Positions 23,334-55,482 of a stretch of DNA of 64,000 nt are shown piece by piece. Position 1 is the stretch's first letter. Each line of letters opens with the position of its first letter. The notes beneath the pieces are model-generated. The model made no database searches. It had not been told where the DNA came from and saw nothing but the letters and a program-made list of their open reading frames with translations. Position numbers and translations under genes: made by a program. The stretch is taken from the NCBI GenBank assembly GCA_964270895.1, contig OZ185447.1. One strand, written 5' to 3'. This DNA comes from Podarcis filfolensis (taxonomy: Eukaryota).

Positions 23334-23372
<39 letters not shown>

Positions 23373-34199: not shown

Positions 34200-34730
34200 C
34201 TTGAGGAAGTTAACTTGTGCGTCGTTCCTTGTTTTGCAACATTATCACCCGGTCCCCTAAGAAAGGTATCGCGCGCCCTTTCCTGGTCCCGTTTCCTGCT
34301 TGGCGGGGTGTGTGCGTGTGTTTTTGTGTGTGTGTCCTGTATGGACACGGAACTCCGCCCCTTCCAGCCCTCGGCTCCTCCCCTCGTGGAACTGACTCAC
34401 TGCTGCTAATTTAATTCCTCTGCTCATTCCAAGGATTCCAGAGGAAAACTGTCACCTTTCCAAAATACCACGCAGGCCTGTTGCTCCTCTGCGCGCACCA
34501 CCACGCTGCTCTTCTTCCCATTTCCAATCCCAAGGAGTGGGCAGGAACCTCCTGGATGAGTCAAAATTAACCCTAGCGGTGAAGAGCCTTTAATACTCTT
34601 TTTTTTCACGCCCCCTTCCCCCCCTTAAAGCAAAGTTCAGGGAAAGTTTCTCCTTTACGTTCTCCCCCCCCCCCCCCCGCCTTCACTAGCGCGCACAAAA
34701 CCGGCCTCTTGGGTATCTTCTGAAAGTAAG
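34200..34730 (+). promoter_or_regulatory. Probable TEAD2 promoter / non-coding first exon
   Basis: CpG-containing, repeat-free stretch with a strong donor (tgaaa|gtaagt at 34726). MCAT CATTCCA at 34425-34431 and AP-1 TGAGTCA at 34557-34563. TSS not determinable from sequence. Confidence 0.5.
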
Positions 34731-37700
34731 TAATATTTCCTCCCCTCCTCCCAATCGTTCGTTCTGTTTAATTTCCTACTTGGGAGCAAGCCCTGACAGG
34801 GAAGATTTCGATTTAAACGTGCATCTGGTGGTGAGCTGTGATTTAGCTTTTGATTTTGGTTTGCAGGGAGGAAAAAACGTTGCTTGCAACTTTTCTTCTT
34901 TTGTGGGAAAAGTCTACCACTACGTACTTTAATTTTAATTTAAAGAAGTGGAAGACTGGAAGCGTGAGGGTTTCTGTATGCGTACATAAATATATTGTGG
35001 TTTTAATTTATTTTATGTATAGGTACTGATATATAGGTATTGAAATATATATATTTGTCACTGGATTGCTTGGGACTATGTTTCCAAAAGATCGTCATAA
35101 TATCCAGTAATTTGTGTGAGTTTCACGCTGTATTCTTTAATTTTGCACGTAAGTAGTAGGTTGGCGCCGTTAACCCTCTTAATATATATAAACGTTTTTG
35201 AATGTGAAATCTCGAAGCAGAGAGGTGGGAGGGAGTACCACACCTTTTTTAATGGCTTGATTGTGTGCCTGTGAGTTTCTCTTTGTCTGAGTAAAGGACA
35301 GGGGCTATAACTTTTTGTCTGAAAGCCAAGAGTTCATGAGGTTGCTTGCAGGGGGCAATTGTGTGATTCGGTGTCGTTTTGATAGCGAGTTTCAATGGAG
35401 GGCGGAGATGGGTTTGTTCCAAATTTTATTTTGTTAAGCTTGATTCTCCACTTGGAAGGGATGTAGTGTGTGTTTGTGTTTTAACTTTCCCCATCTCCTC
35501 TCTCCCTCACAATGTCAGCCATTAAGGGAGGGCAGTCTTTATCTTACCTGATCTATACATTCCCCACTGCCCCAAGGGGTCAACAAACACTTCCTGAAGT
35601 CCTCTGCCCATTTACTTCTAAGCCACACACAATGGGAATTACTTCTGAGTAAACATGGGGGGGGGAGTACCCTCCTTCAAAGATATCTGTGTGTGAGTGA
35701 TGATTCAGAGACTTCTGAGCAAGGAAAACCCTCTTTTTAAAAATCAAAATGTAGAAATTCTGATTTGTGGGCTGCCTGATTAGTGTTGTTAGGAAATACC
35801 TGAGCCCACACAGGCCAAAACAAGGCTCATTTTTGAAATGTTCTGTGAAAGGGAAAAGTTCAAACGTATGTCACGCCTACTGTGTTGTGGATGGCCAAGA
35901 TCTGAAATATAGAAGTGTCATCTGGCAATCCTGGTTCTAAGGCAATGGTGATCCAACTTCAGGCTTGAAGGATCTACTTCATTTTTTACTGCAACCCTGA
36001 GATCCCTCAACCAGAGCCAGATGCAAAATGGTGGTTCGGGAAGTGGAGCCAGTTCTCTTCTGCTGCCTGTGAGTGGGAGAACCAGCTTACAATAAGATTC
36101 CCTTGTCCAAAACTCTGGAGAGCTGTTGCTGGTCAGTGTGAACAGTACTGCACCATATGCACCAATGGTCAAAGCTGCTATAAGGCAGCTTCTGAATAAG
36201 AGTCCTCAGTGGATTATAACAATAAGCATTCAAGCTGTCCAGCAAAACTATACAGTACAAAGACTGGGGCAACCACAATGCACTCAGGTTAATGTATGAT
36301 CTACTGGCAGTTATACAAATAGCTAATGGTAGTAGAGTTGCAGGGGGTAATTTTAGACCTGGGACTTATTAGTCCTTGTAGATAGAAATGTGTGCTACTT
36401 TTGTCAACATGTCGGCAGCCCCTTCCACATTTGGGGGTTCTCTGCCCATTCATCTGAGCAGGAATACTGGCCTTCTCCCCCCAAAGTCTTGCCCTGGTGG
36501 CATTACTGAGAAGTAGAGCTGCCATCTGCCTGCCCTTTATTTTAGGTGCTTCAATTCCCTCTCAGCTCCCACCTCACTTTGTCAAAGGCCCTTCGCTAGA
36601 GTCAGGAAAAAGTTTTTGGATGAATAGCCGTGATCTCCCTGAGTTCCTCACATTCAAGCCCAAAGCATCTTTGAGTATTTTTAAAAACAGACTTTTGTGT
36701 TGCGTCCAACGCTAGCCCTTCGCGGTGTAGTAGTCCCAACCGAAACTAATGGAAATGATTAACTTTGGGCTCATTAATTTCAGCTGGGTTGATCCTGAAT
36801 AGAACTTGGTTAAAATTACAACCCTGTGTCTCCAAAGGTTGCCTTATTTCAGGCTGGTTTTCTCAGGAACAGGTAACACTGGGGGAGTTTTGTTAAGCCG
36901 TAAGGAAAATTTGCCAGTCTGCCTGTCTTGCGTGTATAGGTGGCGTTGTGATTGAATGTTCTGTGTTCCACATCTAGTGAGCAGGTGTGTTGGCGCTGAA
37001 ACTGTTGTATGCTTCATGTTGTGGCTTTTGCAACTGCAGCGCCTGCAAGCAAGGATGGGCCAGTAAATGTGTGTGTATGAGAGGGGTGGGGGTGGGCAGG
37101 TTGGATACAGCAGTTTCCATTTGCACAAGACCTTGATGTGACTTGTTCCAAAAACAAACATGACCTTTCACATGGGTGCATGCGTTTCTCAAATTACAGG
37201 ATGAGGTTGGGGCCCATTGCTGCTTTGTGGAGGGCAGCTTGCTTTTCTTAACTTCCATGCAACTTTTTTTTCTTTTCCTTTGTACACGAAAACTTGTGGA
37301 AAGCAAATCAAAACACTGCATTTGAGGCATTTTGGATTGTGTATTCGGAGCTACCTGCGACTGATCCTTTTGTCTGTGTCTGCTGCAAACTCTGCAGAAC
37401 TGTTAAGCTTTTTGAATGGGAAGTATAGATCCCACCTTTGTCTTTTGAAATTTTACTCCATTTTGCAGGCTCTACACAGGATCAAAATTATCTTAGCATT
37501 TCCTCAGTTCGTGGCATACAAAGGCATTGAATGAGACCTACCCTTCAGTTTGGCTTGCTCTCAAAATGGAGTCTTCATAAACTCCTCCTTTTAAAAAAAG
37601 AAAACTTCAGCCCCAACAACAATTGCTGGAGCTCTTTCTCTGTGCATCATATTCCTTTTGTTTATTTTAGCTTTATTCGGGTTTACCACTTGCATTAAGC

Positions 37701-37838: not shown

Positions 37839-38203
37839 GTAAAAGGTAAAGGACCCCTGGACAGTTAAGTCCAGTCAAAGGCGACTATGGGGTTGTTGCG
37901 CTCATCTCGCTTTCAGGCCAAGGGAACTGGCATTTGTCCACAGACAGCTTTCTGGGTCATGTGGCCATCACGACTAAACCGCTTCTGACGCAATGGGACA
38001 CTGTGACAAGTGCCAGAGCCACAGAAATGCAGTTTTCCTTCCCGCTGCAGCGGTACCTATTTATCTACTTGCACATGCTTGCTTTCAAACTGCTAGGTTG
38101 GGAGAAGCTGGGACATAGCAATGGGAGCTCACCCTGTCACAGGGATTCGAACTGGCAAGTCCAAGAGGCTTAGTGGTTTAGACCACAGCGCCACCCACGT
38201 CCC
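37839..38203 (-). mobile_element. Sauria SINE
   Basis: Reverse complement of the 31127 family; gtaaaaggtaaagg tail. Confidence 0.88.
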
Positions 38204-40944
38204 TAAACCAGTGTGGTGCAGTGGCTTCAGCTGTTTTGCAAGACAACTGTCATCAACTCCAGGTTGGGGAAGACTGAGTTGGACTAGGACCAGGGAGGCC
38301 CAGGTTCACATATCTATCCTGCCAGGAACCATGCTAGCTGACCTTGGGCCAACTACTACCTCTCAGCCTAACCTACCTCACAGGGTTGTTCAGAAGATAA
38401 AAAAAGAGTCTGGAAAGAACCATGTATGTTAGCTAGCTGAGTAGCTTGGAGGAAGAGTGGGATATGAAATATATAATTTACTCAGAAATAGCTAGAGTTC
38501 GTGGGATTTACTCCCATCTGATATAAATTGTAGCTGTAGTTTATCAGGCATAGGCTCCATTTTTTAATACCTTTAATTCCAGTAGTGCAGAGTCAAAAGA
38601 GCATAATTTTGCTGTGGAACGTGGTGGAAAGAAACAAAGGCTGCTGGAAAATGCTAAGAGAAAAAAAGTACTCGAATACTGAGCATAGATACTCTGTACA
38701 CTGATTTGTATAGTTACTTTTCACTTAAGAGCTACAGTTCCCCTTAAACTACAGTTCCTAGGAAGCTGTATGCTTAAAATGTGTTTTAAATGTATGTCTG
38801 CCTGCCGATACCTATGTTTAGCAATTTGTGGCCCCTTGACAGCCCAAAAGGGGAGAGAGAACCAACTCTTTCATAGTATACAAAAGCTCTTCTGTCTGCT
38901 TGAATGAAGGCAACTTTTTTTTTCCTTTTTGCCATAGACAAGTGGCTATTACAAGTGTCTCAGAGCTGTTTATAAACAGAGTTTATATATCAAGCACTTG
39001 GTTCTTTCTCAGTAAATAACACTTTCAAGCAGTTTTTCTTTCTTTCGGATTTGTGCAATGCAATATGGATACCCTCTCCTTTCCTTTGTTCCATACTTGT
39101 GTGGAGATATGCCAGAGCAAGTGGGGGTATCAACTAAATGTCAGCTCAAAATGTCTGCCTAATGTCTGAGGCGAGATGCTTCAGTATGGATTGTCCAGAT
39201 GACAATATTCTTCATTGTATACTCATATTGGTTTATGCGGAGATGGTACTTGTGCGCAACTGTTATAGGCGTCCTTTCTCCCTCTGTCTGAATTATCCGT
39301 TCAATGTTTGTCCTTCTTTCGAACCTTTGTTTTGTTGCCAAAGAACATCCAATTGCCTTTCTTTCCGATGATTCTACGGCTCAGCTTTCCCAAAACTAGG
39401 CTGCACTCTGAAAATCACTTAAGTAGTATAAGTGGTTTCGAGATTGCAGCAGTACAGGAAATCCAGTTGGGTGGGACAAGCCAACCCCCCCCCCCCCGGA
39501 AGAGAAGACTTGAAGGAAGCTGTTCCCTCTGGATTTGTTGTGGATGGGAAGTTTGTCAGGCAAGCCTAGTTCCCTCCCCATCTCACCCCGCCCCTTTGCC
39601 ACTTAAAAATCAGAGGAAAACCTCGGTACAAAAGCAAAAAAAAAAACCAAAATCAGTTGTTCTGACTTCCACAACGCATGTCCTTGGCCTGGTTCTGAGG
39701 AAGTTTGTGGTTGTGATTAATCTCACGCCAGGGAAGTGCCTTTCTTCGTAAAAAGTTTTATCCGTCTGGGAAGGTTGCAGCTGTTGGGAGCCTTCTGGCG
39801 GCAGCGGTGGTGCAGGGTTAGCAAAGGAAATAAAGGCCCACAATCCTAAAAGGCGGGGTGGGGGGAATCTGATCACAGATTAAAGAGCCAGCCCCCTTCC
39901 TGTCTTTTAAAGCAAGACGTAATCCATGCTGGAAGGCCTCTTTGTTTTGCTGCTGATTGTGCTCCCAGGGGTCACTTGTACTGGCGTAACCAGCAAAGAA
40001 CCGGGTTTCCACTTGACAGGGAACAGTGAGGGGCGGGGGGACAGGAGAGGCCTACACCTTTTCGTTCTTTCTTTCCCCGTTCAATCTGGTTTCTCTGGAG
40101 GAGACTTAATTGGCCTATGCTGGACTTTCCACTCAGACAACGACAACAACCCAGTTTTTGCTCTTTACATTTCAACCCTGCTTGCCTCTCCAATCCAGTA
40201 CAAATTTTTCACTCCCACCAACACCAGCGGTGGCCAAAGGCTTTCAGGGTCTACAGTAGACCTAAGGTCTACTGACTGGCCACGCCTCCCCAAAATGAAG
40301 CAAACCTTGCTATTAACAACTGTCAATTAGATCCCCCCCATGGAGAAACATGCTGCTTTCTTCAGCACCCTTAAGAGGTTTGCCACTTTGGCTCCATTTG
40401 TTTTATTTGTCAGTGGTGCTGCTTTTCCCCATGTTGCTCTGTGTCCGTATGACACCCCCCACCCCATATAGATATTGATGCCAAAGGCCAATCCACCCAC
40501 CTCAATACTATCACGTTGTTGGCATCTTGTCAGTCTCAAGGGACAATGGAGTGCGCCTGCAGGGGTAACCTCAAACTGCTGCATTAGCCGCACTGAAGTG
40601 ATATCCCCTCAGTGCATGCCTGAGCAGTGTGTATGGAGGTCCTGCGCTGCCTAGACAAGACCCCCCTTGCTTGGACTCGCCGATGTTGTCCAAAGGAAAG
40701 CAGAGCAATATTTTTGGTATTGGGTTGGCTGCAGGAGATGCTGGAAGGAGGCGTTCAAAGCGCCATCCAACCATCTTAGGGACTCAATTCCGGATTTGTG
40801 TAGGGTTTACACCTTAGCTGGTACTCAGCACCTTTCTCCCCAACCAGTGAAATGGTTTTTTAGCCTTCCTTTCCTCTACCATGAATAGAAACAATTCACA
40901 AAATACATTTAAAGCTCTATGATACCACTTGAAAAAGTTGTGAC

Positions 40945-41560
40945 TGTTGTAAACAAAATCTGCCCCTCTTCCCTTATGGGGTATCCAAGAGCCCGTATAG
41001 AGTCCTTATGTGGGTTCCCTATTGGTAGGAGAAAATAACAGAGGCCAACCAGAGAATATTGAGAAGCAAAGCAGCTAGTAAGCATGATCTTTATTAAAGC
41101 TGTTGCAACAGGGTGCTCCCCTCACACGCAGGAGGACGGAGGAGGACCAAGAACAAAGGTGTGTCTGCCCTTATATAGACATTTTAAATTCCCTGCCCTG
41201 GAGCTCAAGACCACCCCCCCAAACATCATACCTACATCACAGAAAAGGTGGTCTACAACAGAAATTTGAATGTTGTTTTTCCTGTCTGCCAGGTTATCTG
41301 ATAATGCCTTATCTGATTGCCTTTCCTGGTAGTCTGGCCGTTCCTTTGAGATGGTGATTTCCCAATTCCTGAGACAATGGGAAGGTTCCCTCACCCCCTC
41401 CCTCCTTGCAGAGAGAACATTTGGTTAGTTTGGGAGTCAAAATGGTTTCAGGATGGTCTTCCTGTGCTGCTCCAGTCATGTGGTCCACATATCTATGTTT
41501 GTGCTTGGTTGGCACATTTATGAACATTTATTATATATATACCTTAATTTTTTTATTACA
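40945..41560 (-). mobile_element. Solo LTR copy 2 in TEAD2 intron, antisense
   Basis: TG...CA ends, perfect 4-bp TSD TGAC (40941-40944 and 41561-41564). Confidence 0.87.
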
Positions 41561-42976
41561 TGACTTCCCCTAAAGAATTCTGGCAGCTGCAGCTTGTTGA
41601 GAGTGCGGAGAGGAGACCCCTATTCCCCTCCCAGAGCTATCATTCCCAGAGTGGTTTTAACAGTCAATCCCTCTTCCCAAAGAACTCTGGAAGATAGTAG
41701 CTCTGCAAGGGAAATAAGAGTCTCTAACAACTCTCTGCACCTCAACAAACTATAGTTCCCTAGTAGATCTGGTGGCTGAGCAGTGGTGAGGCCTAGGCAG
41801 ATCAGGCCTCTTAAGAAACTTCTATCTTAGATCTACTGCTCTGTTAGTTTTCAATAGGTAGGCCTGCTGTCTACCTACAGGTGAAACTGGCACCCAGATA
41901 ACATCTTTCCACTGCCCACAGAAACCCTGTCCTGTGCCTGGCCTCCCTTCACCTCCTCCAGACCTTAATTAATTGCACTGCTGCTATGATCAGCTTCACA
42001 GCCCTCTCCTCACTGCGTTTCACTAAAAACAGCAACTCCCCAAAAACCAGGTTAACAACATGGGATTGCACTTCAGGGTTGCCGTACATTACCTCTTTAC
42101 TTCCTCCAGGAAAATGGGCATAACAACAGTACTTGGCAGGGCAGGCGTACCCCACAATCTCGGCCATAGTCCTTTCCCCTGCAATATGGGTCTATTATGC
42201 TATACCATGTTCACAAATTGAGAAGAAAATCACTCCCCCCCCCATATGAAATAAGTCCTTAGGGCATGAGTGCCTGACTTACTGCTAATTTTTAATTGAC
42301 ATACTACTGCCTAATCACAGCTACACTAAATCCAACATACTTGAACTTTCTATTGGGCAGCAGTGAAGGAGCAGTCAAGGCGTCACAAACCAATAGTCAA
42401 TAATGATAATGGGAGTTTCACTCTAGCCTCTGACTCAATGGCTTGAACCGCTTTCCTAAATGTCTGTCATTTAGGTGGGATTTCACTCACAGGCTGCAAA
42501 CATTGAAAAGTAGGAGAAGGCTTGTTCCCCATGAAACAAATTGAGAATTGGGGGCTGCACATTTTTGCCTCAAATCTTGGGTTCTACAGAAGCTAGAAAA
42601 AGAAAAAAAGTTGGAAATCTGTGAGCATCTGCCGGTGTCGAAACCCTTCCTTGTCACAGCTAAAACTTGAGATGATGGTCCTTAGCCTTGCTGTCTCACT
42701 TAAATACTCTTTAAATACAGGGTAGTTGTATCAGCAGCCATTACTCATTGCTAAATTGAACCTCTGCTATTAGAGGTAATATACCTCTGTTTACGAGAGA
42801 CAGAGATCAAAGAGCGGGGGATTTTTGTTCCTTTGTGCTCTAGTTAAAAGTTTATCGGGGGCATCTGATAGCCACTGCTGCTGAGACAATGCTGGACAAC
42901 AAATATTATTTGCCTTGCTGCTTCCAATCAGTTCTCTGGTCAGCATAGGAATGGGCAACTTAACTCGCAATAGAAG

Positions 42977-43205
42977 TACAGTGGTACCTTGGGTTACACA
43001 CGCTTCAGGTTACACACGCTTCAGGTTACAGACTCCGCTAACCCAGAAATAGTACCTCGGGTTAAGAACTTTGCTTCAGGATGAGAACAGAAATTGTGCT
43101 CTGGCAGTGCGGCAGCAGCGGGAGGCCCCATTAGCTAAAGTGGTGCTTCAGGTTAAGAACGGACCTCCAGAACAAATTAAGTACTTAACCCAAGGTACCA
43201 CTGTA
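42977..43205. mobile_element. Tc1/mariner-type MITE
   Basis: TIR with TA flanks. Confidence 0.88.
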
Positions 43206-43955
43206 TATAGGGCATATCCCAGTGTCATTTTAGGACCTGGGAGACCAGGGATCAAATCCCTACTTGGACATGGAGCTCGCTGGATGATGTTGGACCAGTC
43301 ATTGCCTTTCTCAGACTAACCTACCACACTCACAGGGTTGCTGTGGGGATTAAATGAGGAGAGAGGAGAACCATGTACGCCATCTTGAGCTCCTTGGGAT
43401 ACGAAGGCAATAAATATGCAGAAGGTGCCAGGTTCAGTCCTCTGCATAGAATTGTAGCATTGGAAGAGTGACCATGAGGGTCGTCTAGTCCAACCCCCTG
43501 CAGTCTTTTGCCGAGCGTGGATCTTGAACCCACAATTTAGAGTCTCATGTTGTACCATCTGAGCTATCCCAGGTAGGCTGGGAATGTCCTCTGTCTGAAA
43601 TCCTAGAGAATATTATCGACCTAGTGTAAATAATTACGCTAAATGGACCAATAGCCTGACTTGGGAAGGTGGCTTCCAATGCCCTTCAGATATTATTGAG
43701 AACCCCCAGCTCCCATCATCCATAACCATTGGGCATGCTGGCTAGGACTGGGGGGAGTTAGGAGTCCAGGAGCCACAGGTTCCCCACCCTTGGTCTAGGA
43801 CTAACTGTATGACACCAAGCTTTCCACAGGTAAAAACAACCAAATGGGAAGGAAGGGAAAATGGAGGTGAGCTGTTGCCCATCTTCTGTCAGTTAGGAAA
43901 CTTTCCGCTCCTCCATCCCTCAGATCTGATTGCCGCCTGTTCTGCTTTCTTTCAG

Positions 43956-44165
43956 GTAACCCTCCTGACACCATAGAGCCTGGCAGCTGGGGCCAGGGGG
44001 CCAGCCCCTCTGGGGAGATGGGGGACGCTGGGGAGAAGGGTCTGGACAACGATGCAGAAGGGGTCTGGAGCCCTGATATTGAGCAGAGTTTCCAGGAGGC
44101 CCTGGCCATCTACCCACCCTGTGGGAGGCGGAAGATCATTCTTTCGGATGAGGGGAAGATGTATG
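43956..44165 (+). CDS. TEAD2: TEAD2 first coding exon (IEPGSW...[38 protein letters not shown])
   Basis: ttcag acceptor, gtaggt donor; invariant TEA N-terminal motif. Confidence 0.97.
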
Positions 44166-47100
44166 GTAGGTGGAACTTAACTTTGACCCATTAGACCGGC
44201 TGCTCTTGTCCTTGGTTCTCTTTGGGGATCGTCCTGCAAGCCATAATATATGATGAGAAGCAATGGGCTTAGAATACGTGAGGTAAAAAAAGAAGACGAC
44301 GCTTTTCTAGCTCCCTGAAGAAATGGAAGGAGTTGGGAAGGTGGCCACTGATGGTGCTGTGTTCCTGCGGTATACCGCTAGCAGTGCCTTTTCCCTTCCA
44401 GCTCTGAGAGGGGGAAAGAGGTGGTCCTCAGATGCAGCCTTCATGGTACTGTGCCATAGATGCTGTGCAGAAAGCTCTCTTTAGGGACAGAAAAGAAACA
44501 AAAGAGCCAGCAGGGCCAGGAAGAGAAATGAGGGAGCTAAATGCACCATTGTAAACAGAGGCCCTACAATGTGCCGCGCTAGACCTATAACGACAGAGAC
44601 TCACCTGGAGGCAGTTCTTACTCTCCATAGGCGAGTGGCTAATGACAGTTCAATTTTCAGTTATACAATTTGTACCATCCCTTTCTTTTAAGGAACTTCT
44701 GCATCAATATCCTGCATTTGGACAAGTCACTCTCTCTTAGCCTGACCCACCTCACAGGGTTGTTGTGAAGATAAAACCACAGAAAGCACCCTGGGGTCTT
44801 TAGAGGCAGTGTGGGGTGTACTTTTGGTGATGGGGGACAACCGTGTGCAAGGTCTGCTGGAGGAGGGGTCAGGTTTGCATCCGCCCACCTTTAAACGTCT
44901 GCAGTGGGCGTGACCTGACAGTCCAGATGATTCAGAAGTTAGCAGGGTTGTGTCTCTGAGCACGTGCAGAGTTGGGGAGACTGCAACCTCAGCATGCTTT
45001 GACCTGCCCCATGTGGCAAGTTATCACTGTTGTCAGCAGCATGGTCAAGAGAGGCGGGGGAATGCCACCTCTGTATATGGTGCTCAAGTTGGATGGGTTG
45101 TTTTCCTGATTTCTTGCCTCTTCTCTCTCAGGCCGCAATGAACTCATTGCCCGCTACATTAAACTGAGGACAGGCAAAACACGGACAAGGAAACAGGTAA
45201 ACGTGATGGGCTTGACATGAAGCCTAAGACTGCAGGAAATAAATCCGAGGTGTGTGGGGAGAATGAGGCCTGGTGAGATTTCCTCCTTTCTCTCCACAGA
45301 GTTTCCTGCTAAGTCTCTCCCCCAACTCCTTCCACAGGTCTCCAGTCACATCCAGGTTTTGGCCCGGCGGAAAACCCGTGAGATTCAGGCCAAGCTCAAG
45401 GTGAGTCCCTTCCCTGCATTCCCTGAAATGTTTATGACAAGCTTGCACCTCTGGATTCCCTACCCGTCCTGCTGAAGGAGTAGTAGTAAGGGGGGTACAT
45501 ATTTACCCCCCCAAAGTCCCATAATGCTTTGCTGGTACTTGGGACAAGCTCTAAGTTTGAGGGAAATTATTGGGAAAGTGCCATCAATCAACCCCCTCCC
45601 CTCCCCGTCTCTGAGGGAATTGTTTTTTATTATTATGTGTTCCGTTTATTACCCATCATTCACCATCAACATTAAAAACAGCTAAAACAAATCACAGTCA
45701 CTGGAATAGGGTGGTTCCTGAAAACACATCTCTCAGGTGTCAAAGGTGGCAACTACAGTGGTACCTCGGTTTTAAAACAGCTTAGTTCACGAACAACTTG
45801 GAATTCGAACGCCGCAAACCCAGAAGTAGGTGTTCCGGTTAGCGAACTTTTTTCAGAATCAGAACTGTTCCGTTTTGAGTGTTACACTTCCTTTTTCAGT
45901 GCCACACTTTCGTTTTGAGTGCCCCTGCTCCTGTTTGCACATGAATAGGAGTGGGATGGGGCAGCTCAGCTGGGGACTGGAAAGCCTCCGCTTCCCAGCT
46001 GAGAGATCCCCGCCCCACTCCTGCTTGCATGGGAGTAGGAGCTGGATTGGGGCTGCTCACATGGAGAGGTGCAGGCTCCATCACACTTTTCCATTGAGGG
46101 GTATATGGCTGTGTTCACCTCAATAGAGAAGTTTAAAGGAACATCATGTGCCAAGGCAGAGACAGCCCAACAGCTGCCTCAGCAGTGGTTTTGGGGCTCT
46201 CAGATGCAGCTGCCGGGCTGCCTCCACCTTTGCCACCCCAGCAACTATTCCGCCTGGCTGCCTTCAGGTGGTGCAGGGGCTCTGATGCTGAGGTGGAGCT
46301 CCTTTAAACTTCTTCCTTGGGGGGAGTGAGGCGTGAATCCCTCAATGGAAAGTGTGACAGAGCCTACACTTCCCCAGCTGAGCAGGCCCATCCAGCTCCT
46401 ACTCCCGTGCAACCAGGAGCAGGGGCAGGGATCTCTTTGGAATGCTTTGGTTTTAGAATGGACTTCCAGAACGGATTAAGTTTGAAAACCAAGGTACCAC
46501 TGTATAATGAAGGCTTCAGGCCTAGGGGCTGCTACAGGGGATGCCTTCTCTTGGGCTGCTACCACCCCATCCCAAACATCTGACAGCCCCCGCTGCCGAC
46601 CTCAACATCTGAGGAAAGAAAGCACACTTTGGGATATTTAGGATATTTAGCCATTTAGGGCTTTAATGTGAGTGCCTTGAGTTTCCCGGATAACAGAAGT
46701 GGGGCAAGCAGCTGTGGTGGCAAGTGAGAAGAGCTCTTCCCAGCTGCAGTGAGGTAGCCGCCATTTTAACTTCCCCAAAGCCCTGTCACCTCCAAAGTAG
46801 CATTGTGCTGCATCTGCAGGGGGCTGGTTTTCTTTAAGTTGCCTGCACTGGACCAAGCATGTTGTTTTTTTCAAGACTGTCGTCCCGTCCCACCTGTCCT
46901 GCTTGGAGCTGGGAGAGGAGCTCTGAGCAGCTGCAGCAAGCAAGGGGAGACATCCGTCTTAATCTTGGCCCTCCTACATCCCTGATGTTGGAGCATTGCA
47001 TTGGGCCCTGGGGAGGAATTAACAATGATGGCTCCCTAGCAGCTGCTCTGAGCGCCTCTCGACACGAAGCAGACAGAAAGGGGCCCAGTGCAGGCAGCTG

Positions 47101-49474
47101 CCCTGAGCAGGTGGGCCTGTTTTAAGGAAACCTCGCTGATCGATGCTAAGAGGAGCCCTGAAGGGCTTCAGCAAGTAAAAGGAGCCCACTTGAAACCCCC
47201 CCCCCCACATAGCTGTGATGCAGCACTGCTACCATGTCAGGGACACTAAAGGCGCAGTTAAAGGGACTCTTCATTGCTTCAGTCTATCAGCCGCCTTCTC
47301 AGTGCCAAACACCATGGTAGTTTTTTTTCCTGTAGAGGCCAGGCTGGAGGGGATAGGTCAGGGAGTTCTGAGATTTGAACAAAGCTTAGTAATTAGCAGG
47401 GGAAGAACAAAGTGTGACTGCAAACCAGGAATCCTGGTTTTCTGAGGAGATTTTTTAATAGGACAATATTGATATTGACCTCCCTAAGGAGTCCGTTCCA
47501 CTGTCGAACAGCTCTTCCTGTCAGAAGCTCCTTCGATATTTAGTCGAAATCTCCTTGTAATTTGAAGCCATTGGTCTGAGTCCTACCCTCCAGGGCAGGA
47601 GAAAAGCTTGCTCCATCCTCCATGTGGCAACCATTTAGGATATTTGAAGGTGGCTATCCTGTCTCTGAGAAGACCACACCCTGAAGAAGTGCTTAGAAAT
47701 CACTGCACTGGACTCCATTACGAAGAGAGGTTGAGAGAACTGGTAGCCCACCAAAGTAGAGACTGAGAAACCAGTTCTCTCAACCTCTCTTCGTAATGGA
47801 GTCCAGTGCAGTGATTTCTAAGCACTTCTTCAGGGTGTGGTCTGAGCCTCAGCAACTGATGCAGCCCCCTTTCTGGAGCTAAGCAGGTGTGGGTCTGGCC
47901 AATGCCAATATATACCACCTTGAATTCCATAATGGAAGGGAAGGCAGCATGTAAATGATGATAATTATACTATTGTTTGTAACTCAATGGCTCACAAGGG
48001 GGCTAACCCCTAGGCACTCCAGGGTGAACACCTTATAACAGGGGTGTTTAACCAACTGTCCTTGAGGCACTGCTGGCTTCCAGGTCCCATCAGCCCCAGC
48101 CAACATGGCCAGTGGTCTGGCATGATGAGAGTTGTTCTCCAGTAGTGAGTGATCCCTTCATCATCGGCTTCCTCAATGAGAAGACATGTGATGACTGATG
48201 GTTTGCCTATATGGCACCCTGTCCCCTACAAATGTCTCCTGTGGGGTGATAGCCCCAGAAGAAATTACATTACCCCCACAGTCAAAGTTATGTGTGTCAT
48301 TATGCACCCCATAACCCCCTGAAACTTCCAGACCCTTCACGGCTGATATGCAGGCATTCCTCAGTAGAGAAATCAGTGTGGAAAAGGAGGCCTTGAGGGT
48401 AGGATGTTTTGAGAACTCCTGCGCAAGGGAACGGGCATTTGCAAACCAAGATTTGTCTCTCTTCAAGGACCAGGTAGCAAAGGACAAAGCGCTTCAGACT
48501 ATGGCAGCCATGTCTTCTGCTCAACTCGTATCTGCCACGGTCCTCCAGGAAAAACTGGGCTTGTCAGAACCCCACTACCCACCCAGCACCACCGTAAGCA
48601 TGTGGAAGAGGGGCTGTGAGGTGGGGTTTCTATGGGGCTGTAATGCTACGACAGGAATGGGGAACCTGTGGGCTCCCAGATGTTGTGGGACTGCAGTTCC
48701 CATAATCCCCAGCAATTAACCATGCCCACTGGGGCTGTTGAGAGCAATAGTTTAGCAAAACCTGCAAGCCCCCAGGTTCCCGGTTCCTGTTCTCTTTCTG
48801 TACTAAAAACTTAGATTAAGGTTTCTGCCAGTTTAGCTCTCAACTCTCCCCAAGGAATCTTGGGAATTGTAGTTTGGTGACATTCAAAAGAATTCTCTGT
48901 GTTAGATCATTAGCTCTTTCTTGGAGAGAGGAAATTATTATTAAATGGTGTTTAAGTTAAGAGTTGTTGCTGAATAAATGAAACTTCAGCTGACAGATCA
49001 TATGTACAAGCATTGGTCAATTATATTTGCATTTGGGCAAAACTATGTTTTGGAAGCAAGAAGCACGCTTCCTAAGTTTTTTAGATCAGATGACTTCGCA
49101 GACGTCATCACCACAGAAGAGGCATTCTCCTCTTCCAAGATGCAGTCTTAGTTTTTATAAACACTTGTTTGTTTGTTTGTTTGTTTGTTTGTTTGTTTTA
49201 ATAATCACTCTCCACTGAATTTGGTCAATTAAACGGTTTTAAAAATTAATTTCATCAGTTCAGAGTAAACAGAATAAATGTTGCAGCCCTAACTTAAGTA
49301 TGTAGTGCAGTTTTTAATTCTTCTGACTTTTCCAGTCCACAGAGTTCTTCCAGTTTTGGACAGGGGATGCAAGCCAATCCCGAGACACTCTAGAGTAAGT
49401 TGTTGTTGTTTTCAGTCATTGACACACATGCACTGCTGGGAGCAGCAATTTGTCTAGCATTTCTGCAACACACA

Positions 49475-49522
<48 letters not shown>

Positions 49523-52500
49523 GCAATGCCCCCCTGTTGAAAAGCCATATCTTGACTCTCCTCTTTCCCCCTCCTACCCTTAGCGTCAAGCCTATCCTCC
49601 AAGCGCCATACCCCATCCCAGTCCCAGCACCCGCTGCTGTCCCAGGTAAGCCACCATCTTCCTAAACCACTTGCCTTCCTCCGAGGCGGGGAGGGGGGTG
49701 AGAGTGCGCCAGTCAGCCTCAGTGCCTTCTCCCTCGGCTCGGCAGGTTACCACGCGCCCCCAGGGAGAGCCCCCCGCCTCCCCAGCGCTACCTCTTGGCA
49801 GGGAAGCCACATTGGTACGGAAACGCTTCGGCTGGTGGAGTTCACTGCGTTTGTGGAGCGGCAGGCAGAACAAGATGCGGTGAGATGTGCACCTATACTT
49901 AACACCATTCGCACACTTGCGCCTCGTGCCAGCTGTCCCCATACATTGTCTTGAAAAGTTTGGGAGTTGGCCTGATGATGTAATCGGCCGTGTGTTGGAG
50001 ATCTAGTTTCAAGACTCCACTCGGTGATGAGATGCTTAGCGGGTGGCCTTGGGCCAGTCCCAGTCTCACTGCCTAACCTGTCTCACAGGGTTATTTAAGA
50101 GGATAAAATAGGACAGCTCTGTTTATGTTGCCCAGAGTTCCTTGGAGGAAGGGCAGGGCTTGATAAACAGAAGTGGATGGAGGGACGAGTATAAGAAACT
50201 ACAGTGGTACCTCGGGTTAAGTACTTAATTCGTTCCAGAGGTCCGTTCTTAACCTGAAACTGTTCTTAACCTGAAGCACCACTTTAGCTAATGGGGCCTC
50301 CTGCTGCCGCCGGAGCCCGATTTCTGTTCTTATCCTGAAGCAAAGTTCTTAACCTGAAGCACTATTTCTGGGTTAGCAGAGTCTGTAACCTGAAGCGTAT
50401 GTAACCTGAAGCATATGTAACCCGAGGTACCACTGTACATGCAGCAAGTGGAGAAGCTAAGCTTAAGAAACCAGTACAGTTGTACCTTGGATCCCAAACG
50501 CCTTGCCAGTCGAACGTTTTGGCTCCCGAATGCCGCAAACCCGGAAGTGAATGTTCTGGTTTGCGAACGTTATTTGGAACCCGAACGTCCTCTGTGGCTT
50601 CCGATTGGCTGCAGGAGCTTCCTGCAGCCAATCGGAAGCCGCACCTTGGTTTCCAAACGTTTTGGAGGTCGAACGGACTTCCGGAATGGATTCCATTTGA
50701 CTTCCGAGGTACCACTGTAGGCTGATACTCATCTCAAGATTAAATTTGGAGAGACAGAAATGTGGTGAAGTAGCTAAAAGTTTGAGCTGTGTAGGGCGGG
50801 AAATTTGGGGTTCAGATCCCACCATTGCCATGAACTTAGGATACTGGACTAGGTGGGGCATTGGCCTGATCCTGAAGGCTCATCTTATTAGGTGACCTGG
50901 AGTAAGTTGCTGTCTCTCATCCTCTGACCACAAGCCAGTGTGGTTTAGTGGTTAGGGTGTTTTATTAGAGTTGGTGTAATCCAGTTTCTAATCCCTAATT
51001 AGATGTGAAACTCGCTGGGTAATCTTGGGTTAGTCACTATCTCTCCATCTGACTTACCTCACAGGGTTATTGTGAGGATAAAATGAGGAGAGAGAACATT
51101 GTGTACTACCTTTAGCTCACTGGAGGGAAAAGCAGGATAAACATGTCATACTTAAAAACAACAACAACAACCCAGCAATATCAGAATTGCACATATTGTA
51201 TTCCTGCTTTACTGAGTTAATTGGGAGGATCACGGCAGTAACATTTGCATCTGATGAAGTAGTCCCTAGTCCACAAAAGCTTACGCCATAATAAAATGTG
51301 TTAGTCCTTAGCTTAAGGTGCAGCAACAGACTAGCATGAGTACCATATTGAAAGCAGTTGTAAAGCACTTTTTAAAAAATGCTATTTGCATTCTAGCTTC
51401 TTCTGGCAAGCGATTCAGTAAATCAAAATTCGGGCAGCTGGTGCCAGTCTGCATCATTCCGTCTCTGACTTCCTCCCTTTCCTCCCGGCAGTGTAAGCAG
51501 CAACACCGCTTTGTGCATATCGACCCGACACCCGCCTCTGACTCCCCGCTGGAGACGGTGGACGTACGCCAAATCTACGACAAATTCCCTGAGCGGGGAG
51601 GTGGGCTGCGAGACCTGTATGACCAGGGGCCTCCTCATGCCTTCTTCTTGGTCAAGTTCTGGGTGAGAATCGCCCTGCTTCCCTCAATCCCCAACAAGCT
51701 AGGAAGGCAAAAGCTCCATTGCTGCATTATGTATAGATATTTACCTGGCTAGTTTGCTGGGGCCGGTGGATTGCCTTGGTGGTTCAAAGCAGATAAAGCA
51801 GATTCTGGGTACATTCAGGCCAGATCTCCTAGAAAAGCTTGGCATGGCTCCATCACTGTTTGGGTGGAGGGGGCAAATGAGCCATTTTGAATAGTGACCT
51901 AATGAGTACATTGTTGTTGCTTCAGCTGTGCACATTAGCCGCCTTCCAGCTTCAAATAGGATCCGGCGGGTCCCAGCCAGAAAAACTGTTGCAAGGGAGC
52001 TTTGGTCTCTGCTCCTAGCTAATTGAAAGCTGCTCTAACCATCTTTACAGCTACAGAAAAATGCCATTGAGCCTGTAATAAAATGTTGCAGTATAGGGTG
52101 CTCCTATTTACCGTACCCGCCAGCCATGACCCCTCCCACATGGTTCCCACCACTCCAAACAACAGCCTGTCAGCATTCTGAAGCTACTGAGCATGCTCAG
52201 TCTTTGTTGCCATGTTTTTGGTGGATTTCCCCTCTGTGTAGGGTTTTTATTTCCTAAAGATGTTTCCTACTGTTGAAAACCTTGGAGGAGACGCAAGCCT
52301 TCCGAAGCCTTCCATTTGTGGCATGGCTGATGTTAATTTGGCACTGTCAGGATTGGCCCTTGGAGAACTTAGTTTGCTATTTGTGTGTAGAATAATGGCT
52401 ATGCTGTTATATTGCTATAACAATGCACACAAAAGCCAGGTCCTCAAGCAAATAGAATTGCAATGGTTCACAGAAGTAATAATTGCATACAGGATATGCA

Positions 52501-55482
52501 AGGTTACTTGCAAACACCCCCCAAGGCCAACCCAAATGAATCATCAATAGCAAACTTTAGAACATTGTCTTATCCACCAAGGCCAGACCTCAGAAGATCA
52601 CAAAAAGGGCAGGAAGGTGATCCCCACCCTCTCTCCTCCTGGCCCCAGCAAGTGATGTTCAATGGCATATTACTTCTCTGCATGTGGGGTTTTTGTTTAG
52701 CTGCTGTGGCAAGTAGTTGTGGAATAGACACTCTTGTCCCACCCCCACTTATGAAGTACTACCTGAAATGTATGACATCCTGCTTTCTATATCAGTCGGG
52801 GTGGGGTGGAAAAAAAGAAAAGAAAGAAAACACTGCATTTTCCCCCCATTTCTCCTGTTACCATAGGCTGATCTGAGCTTTCCCCTCCTTGAAGAAGAAC
52901 CAGGGGGCACAGGAGGGGCCTTCTATGGGGTGAGCAGCCGATACGAGGGCCCACGGGCTCTGACTCTCAGTTGCACCTCCAAGGTCTGCTCCTTTGGCAA
53001 ACAGGTGGTGGAAAAACTGGAGGTGGGTGCGGGGGGGCAGGGGAGAGTTGGCAGGGGGATGACGGGACTTGGGGGGGAGTGGATGGGGAGAGAAGGGGGG
53101 GTTGCCACACTGGCGGGTGGGGGTGCTAGAGGAACAGGGTTCGTTTACGCCTAAGAAGCTTCTGTGCAGCAGCTTGTGCAAAAGTAGCCACGTCGGCCAC
53201 AATGAAAGTTGCCTTTTACCCACTGAGTACACACCACACCCATGAGGAATCCTGGGGAATGTAGTTCACCCCTTACAAAGCCACACTGCCCAGCACTCTT
53301 GGCAAACCACAGTTCCCAGGATTCTTTGGGGGAAGCCATGTGCTTTAGAGGTGTGGTGTGCATGCAGCCTGTTTCTCTGTTTAGCCCATTGCTGCATGCT
53401 CTTATCTCTCCAGGATTTTGGGTGGGGGCAGAAGCATTGTTAGGGTGACCCAGGCAGCTTGAGCCTCAAATCTCCTGCCTTTCCCTCTCCGCCCCAAACT
53501 TAAACCCAAACCCTGCTTATAGGGCTGCTGGGACTACATTTGCATCTATGCATCTAAACTGGCATATGCAGATTTGTGTCAAGGGCCTGTGTTCTCATCC
53601 CTTCAAATACGGTATTTGCAGTGCCCCTGGGCAGGAATCTCTCAGGCCACCTGTTTCCTTATCCTTTTACCAGGCCATTGTGTGTGGGAGGTTGAACCTT
53701 CTGGCTTTTTGCATGCAAAACACGTGTTCCGGCATTGAGCTGTTGTGCTTTCCCTTGCAGCCAATGTGGTGCCCCTCAGACATTGCTGGACATCCGCCCA
53801 TGCTCATTGGCCTGAGGCTGACTGGTCTTCAGAGTCCAAAAACATATTGAGGGCACCAAGTTGGCTGTTTCTGCTCCTGCAGAGATATGGGGAAGCTCTG
53901 GCTCTCCAGATGTTGGACCCCAACTCCCATCATCCCTGACCATTGGGCTAGGCTGGCTGGGGTTGATGGGAATTCGGCTCCAGCATCTTGAAGGCTGCAG
54001 GTCCTCCATCCCTTCATCAGAAGCTTTCCTTCTGATGTGCTGGATGCAGGGAATCTGGTACCCCACTCACCCGATGGAGACCATTAAAAAAAGGGAGACC
54101 TGCAGCCTAATGCTGTGCGTGTCTTAAACTATAGAAGGACCTGGAAGCTAGGAAGATCTGCAGGGTCAAGAGCAACTTGGCCTAGAATGTTTAAGAAGTT
54201 AAGTGTGTGCGAGTGTGAAAGTGTTAAGCTGTATCAGCTACTGGACATTGAGGAGTTAAGATTTGCATCCCACAAACAGATTTACAGTACTTGGAAGTTG
54301 GGGGGGAAACAGGCTTAATTTCAGTTGAACTAATCTTTGCATCGTTTAAGTTTAGGAGTGTGAGTCTTGCTCCTTTTAGAAGGTTGTCCCTATGGTGGCG
54401 GAGGAAGAGAGGTGGCTTCTTCCTTCGGACAAAGGTGGTGTGCATGTGTTAGGTTCTCTCTGTCTCTCATATGCCTGCTTTGCCATTAACCACTCCCATC
54501 TCCCCAACTCTGCAGACTGCAGAGCCTCCCCACTGGGAAGATGGACGCTTTGTTTTCCAGCTGCAGCGCTCACCGCTGTGCGAGTACCTCATCAACTTCA
54601 TCCGCAAACTGCGAACGCTGCCAGAAAAGCCGATGATGGACAGCGTGCTTGAAAACTTCACCATCCTGCAGGTATTTGGGGAAGGAAACGAGGGGCCAAT
54701 TTGCGCGCTCTCTATCTCTCTCCCTCTCTTTCCTTCCCTGGGGGAGGAGAAGGCAGAATAGGGAGCCAAGCCAAAACTTGAATTCTCCATAAATAGAAAC
54801 TCCAGTCCTTGACCGACCCAGAGTCAGTACAGTACAGGGCAACCTTTTAATTTCCCTCAGCTCTCCAGGGTGATGCATTGTGGGGAATCTAAATGGCACT
54901 TATAAAATCCTCCAGTGGCAAGTTCTAGCTTAGGAACATTCCTTCATGTAGGATAGCAAGGGCAGTGTGGCGTGATGCCTCTTCTAAGATTATGCTGGTT
55001 GTGCCTTGTGCATCCATGATGTAATAGTGTGCTGGTTGTAACTATTTTTTCTTATGTGGAAACACAGGCATAACCGAACAGTGTAGAATTCAATTGACAG
55101 ACTTACGCTTCTTTTAATTGGGAAGCAACCCTTAATAAATGCTTGTGTTTTGCAATTTGTGAGTCAGCTGTAAGGCAGTGGAGACCTGGTACAGCAATAA
55201 GGGTGAGGGAAGGGAAAATGGCAGCACCTGTCAAATTTGTTATGGGGGCTGCAGCAAGCTCCCTGTGGGAGAGATTTAGAGAAATCTCATTAAGCTCCTA
55301 GATATGGGCAGGATTGTCCCCTTGCACTGCTGTGAAACTTGTCAGAATACGCTCCATCCCCTCCACAGGTTTTGCGGGATCAAGAAACTCAGGAGTTACT
55401 TTTATGTGTGGCCTTCGTGTTTGAAGTGTCTGCCAGCGAGCATGGGGCACAACACCACATCTACCGGCTGGGCCGGGAGTGA
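43973..55482 (+). CDS. TEAD2: TEA-domain transcription factor TEAD2; complete, 11 coding exons, 432 aa from AUA or 417 aa from AUG 44018
   Basis: Exons 43973-44165, 45132-45196, 45338-45400, 48468-48593, 49336-49394, 49584-49645, 49746-49879, 51492-51662, 52867-53022, 54516-54671, 55369-55482 give 1299 nt in frame. TEA domain and YAP-binding domain present. TEAD2-like motifs ([33 protein letters not shown]) and CD37/DKKL1 neighbours. Confidence 0.92.
45132..45196 (+). CDS. TEAD2: TEAD2 TEA exon ([22 protein letters not shown])
   Basis: 65 nt, invariant TEA sequence. Confidence 0.97.
45338..45400 (+). CDS. TEAD2: TEAD2 TEA exon ([21 protein letters not shown])
   Basis: 63 nt, cacag/gtgagt. 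Confidence 0.97.
45754..46504. mobile_element. Long Tc1/mariner-type MITE with internal inverted repeats
   Basis: Terminal CAGTGGTACC/GGTACCACTG with TA; segment about 46340-46425 is an imperfect inverse of about 46020-46100 and about 45920-45975. Confidence 0.8.
47445..47843 (-). mobile_element. CR1-like LINE fragments including the fold-back palindrome
   Basis: Minus frame reads ...[11 protein letters not shown], resembling the CR1 ORF2 C-terminal [14 protein letters not shown] motif. Confidence 0.65.
47671..47843. repeat. Perfect 74-bp inverted repeat with 25-nt spacer
   Basis: 47671-47744 is the exact reverse complement of 47770-47843 (checked base by base). Confidence 0.97.
48468..48593 (+). 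CDS. TEAD2: TEAD2 exon ([31 protein letters not shown]...)
   Basis: aag acceptor, gtaagc donor; conserved DQ..KDKA.Q.MA.MSSAQ. Confidence 0.95.
49336..49394 (+). CDS. TEAD2: TEAD2 exon ([19 protein letters not shown])
   Basis: tccag/gtaagt; resembles human TEAD2 ASELFQFW. Second in-frame acceptor at 49354. Confidence 0.8.
49478..49520. repeat. (TG)n microsatellite
   Basis: Direct reading; in a short TEAD2 intron. Confidence 0.95.
49584..49645 (+). CDS. TEAD2: TEAD2 proline-rich exon ([21 protein letters not shown])
   Basis: cttag/gtaag, phase 2/1; DVKP motif. Confidence 0.92.
49746..49879 (+). CDS. TEAD2: TEAD2 exon, start of YAP-binding domain (...[22 protein letters not shown]...)
   Basis: ggcag/gtgag; WQG..IGT..LRLVEF.AF motif. 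Confidence 0.95.
50200..50437. mobile_element. Tc1/mariner-type MITE
   Basis: TIR with TA flanks. Confidence 0.9.
50475..50719. mobile_element. Tc1/mariner-type MITE, different internal subfamily
   Basis: TA-CAGTTGTACC...GGTACCACTG-TA; about 40 bp from the previous copy. Confidence 0.85.
51492..51662 (+). CDS. TEAD2: TEAD2 YBD exon (...[15 protein letters not shown]...[12 protein letters not shown])
   Basis: 171 nt, ggcag/gtgag. Confidence 0.97.
52867..53022 (+). CDS. TEAD2: TEAD2 YBD exon (ADLSF...FYGVSSRYE...[15 protein letters not shown])
   Basis: 156 nt, catag/gtggg. Confidence 0.96.
54516..54671 (+). CDS. TEAD2: TEAD2 YBD exon with the acylated-Cys motif (RSPLCEY...[10 protein letters not shown])
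   Basis: 156 nt, tgcag/gtattt. Confidence 0.96.
55369..55482 (+). CDS. TEAD2: TEAD2 terminal exon (...[22 protein letters not shown] stop)
   Basis: cacag acceptor, TGA at 55480-55482. Confidence 0.96.

What the first reader, a model, noticed from the sequence alone, without database searches (positions are those of the whole stretch)
43956..44060. Lizard TEAD2 appears to initiate at a non-AUG (AUA) codon collinear with the TEAD1 AUU start
Seen: GACACC-ATA-G (43973-43975) has A at -3 and G at +4 and opens [16 protein letters not shown], with an in-frame AUG 15 codons later (44018). Established: TEAD1 starts at AUU, TEAD3 at AUA and TEAD4 at UUG, whereas mammalian TEAD2 uses AUG. TEAD1 reads IEPSSWSGSESPAENM, with the same IEP.SW, SP at 11-12 and Met at 16. 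Inference: non-AUG initiation with a leaky downstream AUG is ancestral for all four TEADs and was lost in mammalian TEAD2; this gene would make 432-aa and 417-aa isoforms. Caveat: the frame is open back to the exon start, so an upstream coding exon is not excluded.
Basis: partly seen in the sequence, partly recalled or inferred. Interest (0 to 1): 0.75.

Follow-up and report, generated by a model that had tools for sequence, protein, structure and literature searches.

The report
Lizard TEAD2 probable AUA start codon
In this wall lizard the TEAD2 gene has no normal AUG start where its frog and lungfish counterparts have one; an AUA stands there, so some of the protein probably starts at AUA, as its sister genes TEAD1 and TEAD3 do, but this is inferred from comparison and not measured.

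Summary
ATA lies at 43973-43975 in GACACC-ATA-G, 17 nt into an exon that starts at 43956, and an in-frame ATG follows 15 codons later at 44018. My spliced CDS gives 432 aa from ATA and 417 aa from ATG.

The gene is TEAD2 by three tests: synteny (KASH5, DKK-like gene, TEAD, CD37), a protein tree, and best PDB hits to TEF-4.

Three routes by which other squamate gene models obtain an upstream in-frame AUG are all closed in this window.

At the collinear codon:
- ATA: gecko, boa, an unidentified squamate mRNA and a lungfish-like mRNA.
- Ile in the protein models of four more lizards.
- ATG: the agamid Phrynocephalus, frogs, a caecilian and Protopterus.
- ATT: one unidentified contig.

Against a functional start:
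- Varanus has GCA.
- Colubroid snakes carry an 8-nt frameshifting deletion.
- The 14 codons after ATA show no third-position bias (4, 5, 3 variable sites by codon position), against 0, 0, 8 just after ATG16.

Verdict: AUA initiation with leaky scanning to AUG16 is plausible (about 0.5). "Non-AUG is ancestral for all four TEADs" is not shown.

The parts
34392..34725 (+). Predicted non-coding exon 1 (5' UTR). The 5' end is unknown; the donor is GAAA|GTAAGT after 34725.
   Evidence: It is 77-81% identical to the regions upstream of TEAD2 in Varanus, Phrynocephalus, Eublepharis, Naja and Candoia, and the donor is conserved. The homologous sequence is the 5' UTR of a squamate mRNA contig (L003), where it is spliced directly to exon 2.
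34556..34570 (+). Four-codon uORF, ATG AGT CAA AAT TAA. It is the only ATG in the 358-nt predicted leader and is out of frame with TEAD2.
   Evidence: It is present in Varanus, Phrynocephalus, Candoia and the L003 mRNA, and absent in Eublepharis and Naja.
34626..34628 (+). In-frame TAA, 38 codons upstream of the ATA in the exon 1-exon 2 mRNA. No ATG and no efficient near-cognate codon lies between them.
35395..35466 (+). ATG-containing element (MEGGDGFV...), homologous to the upstream coding exon used in Pogona TEF-4 gene models. In this window it has no GT donor that is in frame with exon 2, and it ends in TAG.
43844..43870 (+). Intronic in-frame ATG, used with a retained intron in Zootoca isoforms X3 and X4. 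Here it is closed by TGA at 43868-43870.
43956..44165 (+). Exon 2: 17 nt of leader, the ATA, the 15-codon candidate extension, ATG16 and the start of the TEA domain.
43973..43975 (+). Candidate non-AUG start codon AUA, in the context GACACC-AUA-G.
   Evidence: Orthologues are compared.
43976..44017 (+). Candidate N-terminal extension, codons 2-15 ([14 protein letters not shown]).
44018..44020 (+). In-frame AUG (codon 16) in the context GGGGAG-AUG-G. It is the start used by most automatic squamate gene models.
45132..55482 (+). Remaining ten coding exons of TEAD2: 45132-45196, 45338-45400, 48468-48593, 49336-49394, 49584-49645, 49746-49879, 51492-51662, 52867-53022, 54516-54671 and 55369-55482 (with the stop).

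Best explanation
The window holds the TEAD2 (TEF-4) gene of a Podarcis wall lizard.

Its mature mRNA is predicted to join a conserved non-coding exon 1, ending at 34725, to exon 2 at 43956. In that mRNA the TEAD2 frame is closed by a TAA 38 codons upstream and holds no AUG before codon 16.

Scanning ribosomes first meet AUA 43973-43975 in a strong context (A at -3, G at +4). A fraction of them start there with initiator Met-tRNA, giving a 432-aa protein that begins M-EPGSW. The rest scan on and start at AUG 44018, also in good context, giving the 417-aa protein.

The AUA occupies the ancestral start position of the TEAD2 clade. That position is AUG in frogs, a caecilian and Protopterus. It is also the position of the AUU start of TEAD1.

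Shown: the sequence anatomy, the orthology, the collinearity, and the codons present in other species. Inferred: the exon 1-exon 2 splice in this species, any initiation at AUA, and the ratio of the two products. AUG16 may well give the major product.
For: Orthology:
- KASH5 lies upstream (Pfam KASH_CCD 52 bits and EF-hand_9), followed by a DKK-like gene.
- A CD37-like tetraspanin tail lies downstream (Pfam Tetraspanin).
- The squamate TEF-4 clade has 100/100 support.
- TEF-4 is the best PDB hit for three YBD exons.

No upstream AUG:
- The exon 1 frame holds a TAA and no ATG.
- The same pattern, an in-frame stop with no ATG after it, holds in Phrynocephalus, Eublepharis and Candoia, in Naja (in the ATA frame, which the deletion separates from ATG16) and in the L003 mRNA.

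Start position:
- ATA is present in Eublepharis, Candoia and L003.
- ATG is present in Phrynocephalus in the same CCTGACACC context.
- Ile is kept in the Zootoca, Lerista, Pogona, Tiliqua and Hemicordylus proteins.
- Tiliqua models start at an AUG 7 codons further upstream and read through the extension.
- A at -3 and G at +4 are invariant in all 8 squamate DNAs.
- The only indel in an intact lineage is in frame (9 nt, Eublepharis).
- W6 and S11-P12 keep the spacing seen in all TEAD paralogues.
- Frog, caecilian and Protopterus proteins start with Met at this position.
- A lungfish-like mRNA has ATA there, behind a 538-nt leader with no AUG at all.

Precedent: TEAD1, TEAD3 and TEAD4 use non-AUG starts that are conserved in vertebrates (PMC3105428). 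TEAD1 uses AUU even though an AUG lies downstream (PMC5666671).
Against: - In four intact squamates, the variable sites in codons 2-15 fall 4, 5, 3 by codon position and pairwise dN/dS is roughly 0.4 to above 1. The 13 codons after ATG16 vary only at third positions (0, 0, 8; dN = 0). The clear coding signal therefore begins at ATG16.
- Varanus has GCA instead of ATA.
- Naja and Thamnophis share an 8-nt deletion. It puts the ATA out of frame and leaves a TAG in the ATG frame. The extension is therefore dispensable.
- AUA is among the weaker near-cognate start codons (general knowledge).
- No conserved downstream hairpin is present.
- AUG16 has a good context.
- The exon 1-exon 2 junction here rests on homology and on one mRNA contig from another squamate.
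Confidence: 0.5

Rival explanations
1. AUG16 (44018) is the only start that matters. The AUA is a relic of an older start codon. It and the following 42 nt are now 5' UTR, kept by slow decay or by nucleotide-level constraint near the real start. Any initiation at AUA is trace-level noise.
For: - Coding-type substitution begins exactly at ATG16: 0, 0, 8 variable sites by codon position downstream, against 4, 5, 3 upstream.
- [14 protein letters not shown] is invariant in the species analysed there, while 7 of 14 upstream residues vary.
- Varanus lost the ATA, and colubroid snakes frameshifted the stretch, yet both kept the gene.
- The 3' half of the stretch stays conserved in colubroid snakes, where it cannot be coding.
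- Most automatic gene models start at M16.
Against: - ATA or ATG is kept at the position in 7 of 8 squamate DNAs, with invariant -3 and +4.
- A change to ATG in Phrynocephalus, and an AUG 7 codons upstream in Tiliqua models, would both lengthen the protein. They should be selected against if the stretch were harmful or meaningless as protein.
- The W and SP motif keeps the spacing shared with all paralogues.
- Varanus, which lost the start, has changed residues (P3, S5) that are invariant in the lineages that keep the full-length extension.
Confidence: 0.37
2. The stretch is coding but AUG-initiated. In this lizard an alternative first or internal exon, not recognised here, supplies an in-frame AUG, as the gene models of Pogona, Lerista, Hemicordylus and Zootoca propose for those species.
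For: - The frame is open to the exon start.
- Several Gnomon and other models in other squamates add upstream AUG exons.
- A conserved ATG-containing element exists at 35395.
- No transcript data for this species could be obtained.
Against: - The three homologous routes are closed in the window: the exon 1 frame by a TAA, the 35395 element by the lack of an in-frame donor and by a TAG, and the intronic ATG 43844 by TGA 43868.
- The upstream exons proposed in different species are unrelated to each other.
- The one real squamate mRNA contig, L003, joins exon 1 directly to exon 2.
Confidence: 0.08

Closest known systems
TEAD1 (TEF-1) AUU-initiated N-terminus (Xiao et al. 1991, as cited in PMC5666671 and PMC3105428)
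   Same: The near-cognate AUH codon is at the same position. It is followed by E-P-x-S-W, S-P at residues 11-12 and, in mammals, Met at residue 16. The TEAD1 non-AUG start is conserved throughout vertebrates (PMC3105428).
   Different: The TEAD1 extension is nearly invariant across tetrapods, and the AUU is reported as the sole start. In squamate TEAD2 half of the residues vary, no third-position bias is seen, and the start was lost twice. The codon is AUA, not AUU.
TEAD3 and TEAD4 non-AUG-initiated N-termini (PMC3105428; ribosome-profiling support in bioRxiv 10.1101/2022.05.02.490320). The AUA (TEAD3) and UUG (TEAD4) codon identities are from my memory of RefSeq.
   Same: They belong to the same gene family and have a non-AUG start ahead of the x-S-N-x-W ... 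S-P tail. TEAD3 uses the same codon, AUA.
   Different: Those starts are experimentally or ribo-seq supported in human and are curated in annotation. The lizard TEAD2 case rests on comparative sequence alone.
AUG-initiated TEAD2-clade genes of frogs, a caecilian and Protopterus (NCBI models named TEF-4, TEF-1-like or TEAD4.S)
   Same: They are orthologous by the tree (99/99 support). Their start Met sits exactly where the lizard has AUA (M-DPNGW against I-EPGSW).
   Different: They use a normal AUG and have no AUG at codon 16. Their next Met is at about codon 23.
Mammalian TEAD2
   Same: Same locus (KASH5, DKKL1, TEAD2, CD37). The lizard YBD exons hit TEF-4 structures best.
   Different: From memory, not checked here: the mammalian protein starts at an AUG about 11 codons upstream of the G-S-G-W motif, so its start is not collinear with the lizard AUA.

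Membership tests
TEAD2 (TEF-4) orthologue | Conserved gene neighbourhood: KASH5/CCDC155, DKKL1-type gene, TEAD2, CD37 | tested here: met
   Pfam gives KASH_CCD at 52.2 bits (cut-off 43.3), EF-hand_9, and sub-threshold Dickkopf_N hits (20-25 bits, cut-off 25) upstream on the minus strand. A CD37-like C-terminal exon lies at about 60745-60834 on the minus strand, collinear with the tetraspanin gene next to TEAD2 in Candoia. The human gene order is from memory.
TEAD2 (TEF-4) orthologue | Groups with named TEF-4 proteins rather than with TEAD1, TEAD3 or TEAD4 | tested here: met
   The tree puts the window protein inside squamate TEF-4 (100/100) and apart from the TEAD1 clade (100/98) and the TEAD3 clade. 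TEF-4 is the top PDB hit for three exons. No mammalian full-length TEAD2 or TEAD4 was in the tree.
[quoted passage not shown] 2011, PMC3105428) | A near-cognate codon in good Kozak context opens an in-frame stretch upstream of the first AUG | tested here: met
   GACACC-ATA-G at 43973, with 15 codons to ATG 44018.
[quoted passage not shown] 2011, PMC3105428) | The extension is bracketed upstream by an in-frame stop with no intervening AUG, in this and other species | tested here: met
   Window: TAA 38 codons upstream. Phrynocephalus 14, Eublepharis 47, Candoia 10 and, in the ATA frame, Naja 10 codons upstream. The L003 mRNA has TAG 33 codons upstream, and the lungfish-like mRNA has TGA 48 codons upstream. 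For the window this rests on a predicted splice, not on transcripts of this species.
[quoted passage not shown] 2011, PMC3105428) | Coding-type conservation of the extension across species: purifying selection and no frameshifts | tested here: inconclusive
   The frame and the EPGSW and SPS-E motifs are kept in nine squamates, with one in-frame deletion in the gecko. However, there is no third-position bias (4, 5, 3), dN/dS is near 1 at the variable codons, colubroid snakes carry a frameshift, and Varanus lost the start codon. Fourteen codons in four or five species give little power.
[quoted passage not shown] 2011, PMC3105428) | Direct evidence of initiation: ribosome profiling, an N-terminal peptide, or start-codon mutagenesis | not testable with these tools
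No ribo-seq or proteome data are available here.

The most novel reading that the evidence does not exclude
The start codon of the TEAD2 clade has switched repeatedly between AUG and near-cognate codons at one fixed position. It is AUG in frogs, a caecilian, Protopterus and Phrynocephalus. It is AUA in most squamates and in a second lungfish-like species, and AUU in an unidentified contig. Squamates added a back-up AUG at codon 16. That made the upstream start dispensable and allowed its independent loss in Varanus and in colubroid snakes. This would be a natural series for studying how non-AUG starts arise, persist and die.
Probability: 0.35. Interest if true: 0.6.

Novelty: new member of a known kind. 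Interest (0 to 1): 0.45.

Why it matters
TEAD1, TEAD3 and TEAD4 are textbook cases of conserved non-AUG initiation, and TEAD2 is treated as the AUG-using exception (PMC3105428). If lizard TEAD2 also starts at a near-cognate codon, two things follow:
- The exception would hold for only some lineages (AUG also stands at this position in frogs, a caecilian, Protopterus and one agamid).
- Most automatic squamate gene models, which start at Met16 (Tiliqua and Phrynocephalus models are exceptions), would miss 15 residues that carry the W and S-P motif shared by the family.

The AUG/AUA/AUU interchange at one homologous position, together with two independent losses, would give a compact comparative system for asking why some genes keep inefficient start codons. 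The practical consequences are modest, and the claim is still only comparative.

Tried and rejected
- **RNA reads.** There is therefore no transcript evidence for lacertids. They were used only inside local scripts (CDS assembly and the tree) and were masked for the local tblastn.
- **Downstream hairpin.** The fold of 43956-44060 has a z-score of +1.8, which is less structured than shuffles. The small local stem is not conserved. I rejected a hairpin that would boost near-cognate initiation.
- **Rfam.** A scan of 34000-44050 found nothing.
- **AUG depletion of the leader.** The window has 1 ATG against 3.5 expected, which is not significant. Only the lungfish-like mRNA is striking, with none in 538 nt.
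- **Failed look-ups.** Three encoding-contig look-ups failed (Tiliqua X6, Pogona X5, Zootoca X4) because only the longest isoform is indexed. The Tiliqua AUG and the Pogona exon could not be seen in DNA.
- **Short-query protein search.** It returned mostly TEAD1, TEAD3 and TEAD4 fragments.
- **Organism of the Logan runs.** A paper search for the run accessions found nothing. L003 is not a tegu as I first assumed. It sits next to the geckos in the tree, and its 90% cluster mixes many squamates.
- **Turtles, crocodilians, birds, tuatara and monotremes** were not reached.

Full report
**Observation.** An acceptor (tttcag) ends at 43955. The exon begins GT AAC CCT CCT GAC ACC, then ATA at 43973-43975 with A at -3 and G at +4. 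The frame then reads [15 protein letters not shown] before ATG at 44018. I joined eleven coding exons with AG/GT borders, from 43956-44165 through 55369-55482. The protein differs at one residue from a Podarcis raffonei TEF-4 isoform and at three from a P. muralis isoform, apart from an alternative exon. The window therefore comes from a Podarcis wall lizard.

**Identity of the gene.**
- Upstream on the minus strand are KASH5/CCDC155 (Pfam KASH_CCD at 52 bits, EF-hand_9) and a Dickkopf-type gene.
- Downstream is the tail of a CD37-like tetraspanin, collinear with the tetraspanin next to TEAD2 in five other squamates.
- From memory, this is the human 19q13.33 gene order.
- Three YBD exons hit TEF-4 structures best.
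- In a maximum-likelihood tree of 38 TEAD proteins the window protein lies in the squamate TEF-4 clade (100/100). That clade is sister to the frog and caecilian genes, then to the lungfish genes, then to the shark 'TEF-1-like' genes (99/98). All of these are separate from TEAD1 and TEAD3. No full-length mammalian TEAD2 was available for the tree.

**Is there an upstream AUG?** A 400-nt block at 34376-34774 is 77-81% identical to DNA 4.4-10.5 kb upstream of exon 2 in Varanus, Phrynocephalus, Eublepharis, Naja and Candoia. It ends in a conserved donor, GAAA|GTAAGT, after 34725. A spliced mRNA contig from an unidentified squamate (L003) carries the homologous sequence as its 5' UTR. In that contig it is joined at exactly that donor to exon 2.

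With this junction the window's TEAD2 frame runs back 38 codons from the ATA to a TAA at 34626. That stretch holds no ATG and no efficient near-cognate codon. The same bracketing, an in-frame stop with no ATG after it, holds in Phrynocephalus, Eublepharis, Candoia and the L003 mRNA, and in the ATA frame in Naja.

- The intronic ATG that Zootoca isoforms X3 and X4 use has its counterpart at 43844, but a TGA follows at 43868.
- The ATG-containing element that supplies the Pogona N-terminus has its counterpart at 35395. It has no GT donor in frame with exon 2 before a TAG.

I could not check transcripts of this or a related lacertid.

**The start position in other species.**

| Species or source | Codon or residue at the collinear position |
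|---|---|
| Eublepharis | ATA; a 9-nt in-frame deletion follows |
| Candoia | ATA |
| L003 mRNA (unidentified squamate) | ATA |
| Naja, Thamnophis | ATA, but a shared 8-nt deletion puts it out of frame and leaves a TAG in the ATG16 frame |
| Phrynocephalus | ATG, in the same CCTGACACC context |
| Varanus | GCA |
| Zootoca, Lerista, Pogona, Hemicordylus (protein models) | T-I-E-(P/S)-G-S-W |
| Tiliqua (protein models) | Same Ile; four of six isoforms start at an AUG seven codons upstream and read through |
| Frogs, a caecilian, Protopterus | Start Met exactly at this position |
| Lungfish-like mRNA, sister to Protopterus | ATA, A at -3 and G at +4, behind a 538-nt leader with no AUG in any frame and an in-frame TGA |
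| Unidentified contig L002 | GCCACCACC-ATT-G |

A at -3 and G at +4 are invariant in all eight squamate DNAs. The collinear position is therefore an old start site whose codon alternates between AUG and AUH.

**Evidence against a functional extension.**
- In four squamates that keep the frame, the variable sites of codons 2-15 fall 4, 5, 3 by codon position, and pairwise dN/dS is about 0.4 to above 1. The thirteen codons after ATG16 vary only at third positions (0, 0, 8; dN = 0). The unambiguous coding signal starts at ATG16.
- The loss of the ATA in Varanus and the frameshift in colubroid snakes show that the extension is dispensable.
- Codon 16 Met is confined to squamates within the TEAD2 clade. 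The next Met is at about codon 23 in amphibians, 19 in sharks and 24 in L002. A 'leaky downstream AUG' is therefore not ancestral.
- I found no conserved hairpin that could boost a weak start codon.

**Evidence on the other side.**
- The invariant residues (G4, S5, W6, S11, P12, S13, E15) are the W and S-P motif that all TEAD paralogues carry at the same spacing.
- Varanus, which lost the start, has changed P3 and S5. It differs from the window at 9 of 42 sites in the extension but at only 1 of 39 sites just downstream. This is suggestive but, by my estimate, not significant.

**Conclusion.** The best reading is dual initiation: some ribosomes start at AUA 43973 and the rest at AUG 44018 (confidence about 0.5). 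The main rival is that AUG16 is the only meaningful start and the AUA is a relic (about 0.37). An unrecognised upstream AUG exon is unlikely (about 0.08).

The literature held here treats TEAD1, TEAD3 and TEAD4 as the non-AUG members (PMC3105428, PMC5666671, bioRxiv 10.1101/2022.05.02.490320). A search for TEAD2 together with non-AUG found nothing relevant. This is a new member of a known kind, supported by comparison only. The wider claim that non-AUG initiation is ancestral to all four TEADs and was lost only in mammalian TEAD2 cannot be decided from these data.

Noticed in passing
window 34392-34471: A deeply conserved stretch of the TEAD2 5' UTR or promoter-proximal exon 1. It holds two adjacent TEAD-site-like motifs (CATTCC AAGGATTCC), followed by CTGTCACCTTTCCAAAATACCAC. 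It is nearly identical in all squamates sampled and still 82% identical in the 5' UTR of a lungfish-like mRNA (L007 31-117). It could be an autoregulatory TEAD site or a translational control element.
   Followed up: partly
window 37101-37264: An intronic block in TEAD2 intron 1 that is 88-89% identical to Naja, Candoia and Phrynocephalus and 77% identical to Eublepharis. This is more conserved than the coding exons. It has no Rfam match and is not present in the L003 mRNA. It is probably an enhancer.
   Followed up: partly
window 39312-40167: A second long conserved block in intron 1, 68-74% identical over 0.4-0.9 kb in Varanus, Candoia, Phrynocephalus, Eublepharis and Naja. Its nature is unknown.
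   Followed up: no
L006 (Naja) about 13000-13060 and L010 (Thamnophis) about 9950-10000: The two colubroid snakes share an 8-nt deletion just after the ATA of TEAD2 exon 2, which the boa Candoia lacks. Several cobra gene models then splice into the TATAG|AGCTGG site from unrelated upstream exons to find an AUG.
   Followed up: partly
window 34556-34570: A four-codon uORF (MSQN-stop) in exon 1. It is conserved in Varanus, Phrynocephalus (MSHI-stop), Candoia and the L003 mRNA, but absent in Eublepharis and Naja.
   Followed up: partly
window 17449-28310, minus strand: The gene between KASH5 and TEAD2 has Dickkopf N-terminal cysteine-rich pieces (Pfam Dickkopf_N, weak hits at 19185-19493 and 19862-20152).
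   Followed up: partly
(proteins P0249, P0320, P0313, P0315, P0308, P0309): Public names for the amphibian, lungfish and shark members of the TEAD2 clade are inconsistent (TEF-4, TEF-1-like, TEF-1, TEAD4 S homeolog), although they form one well-supported clade with squamate TEF-4.
   Followed up: partly
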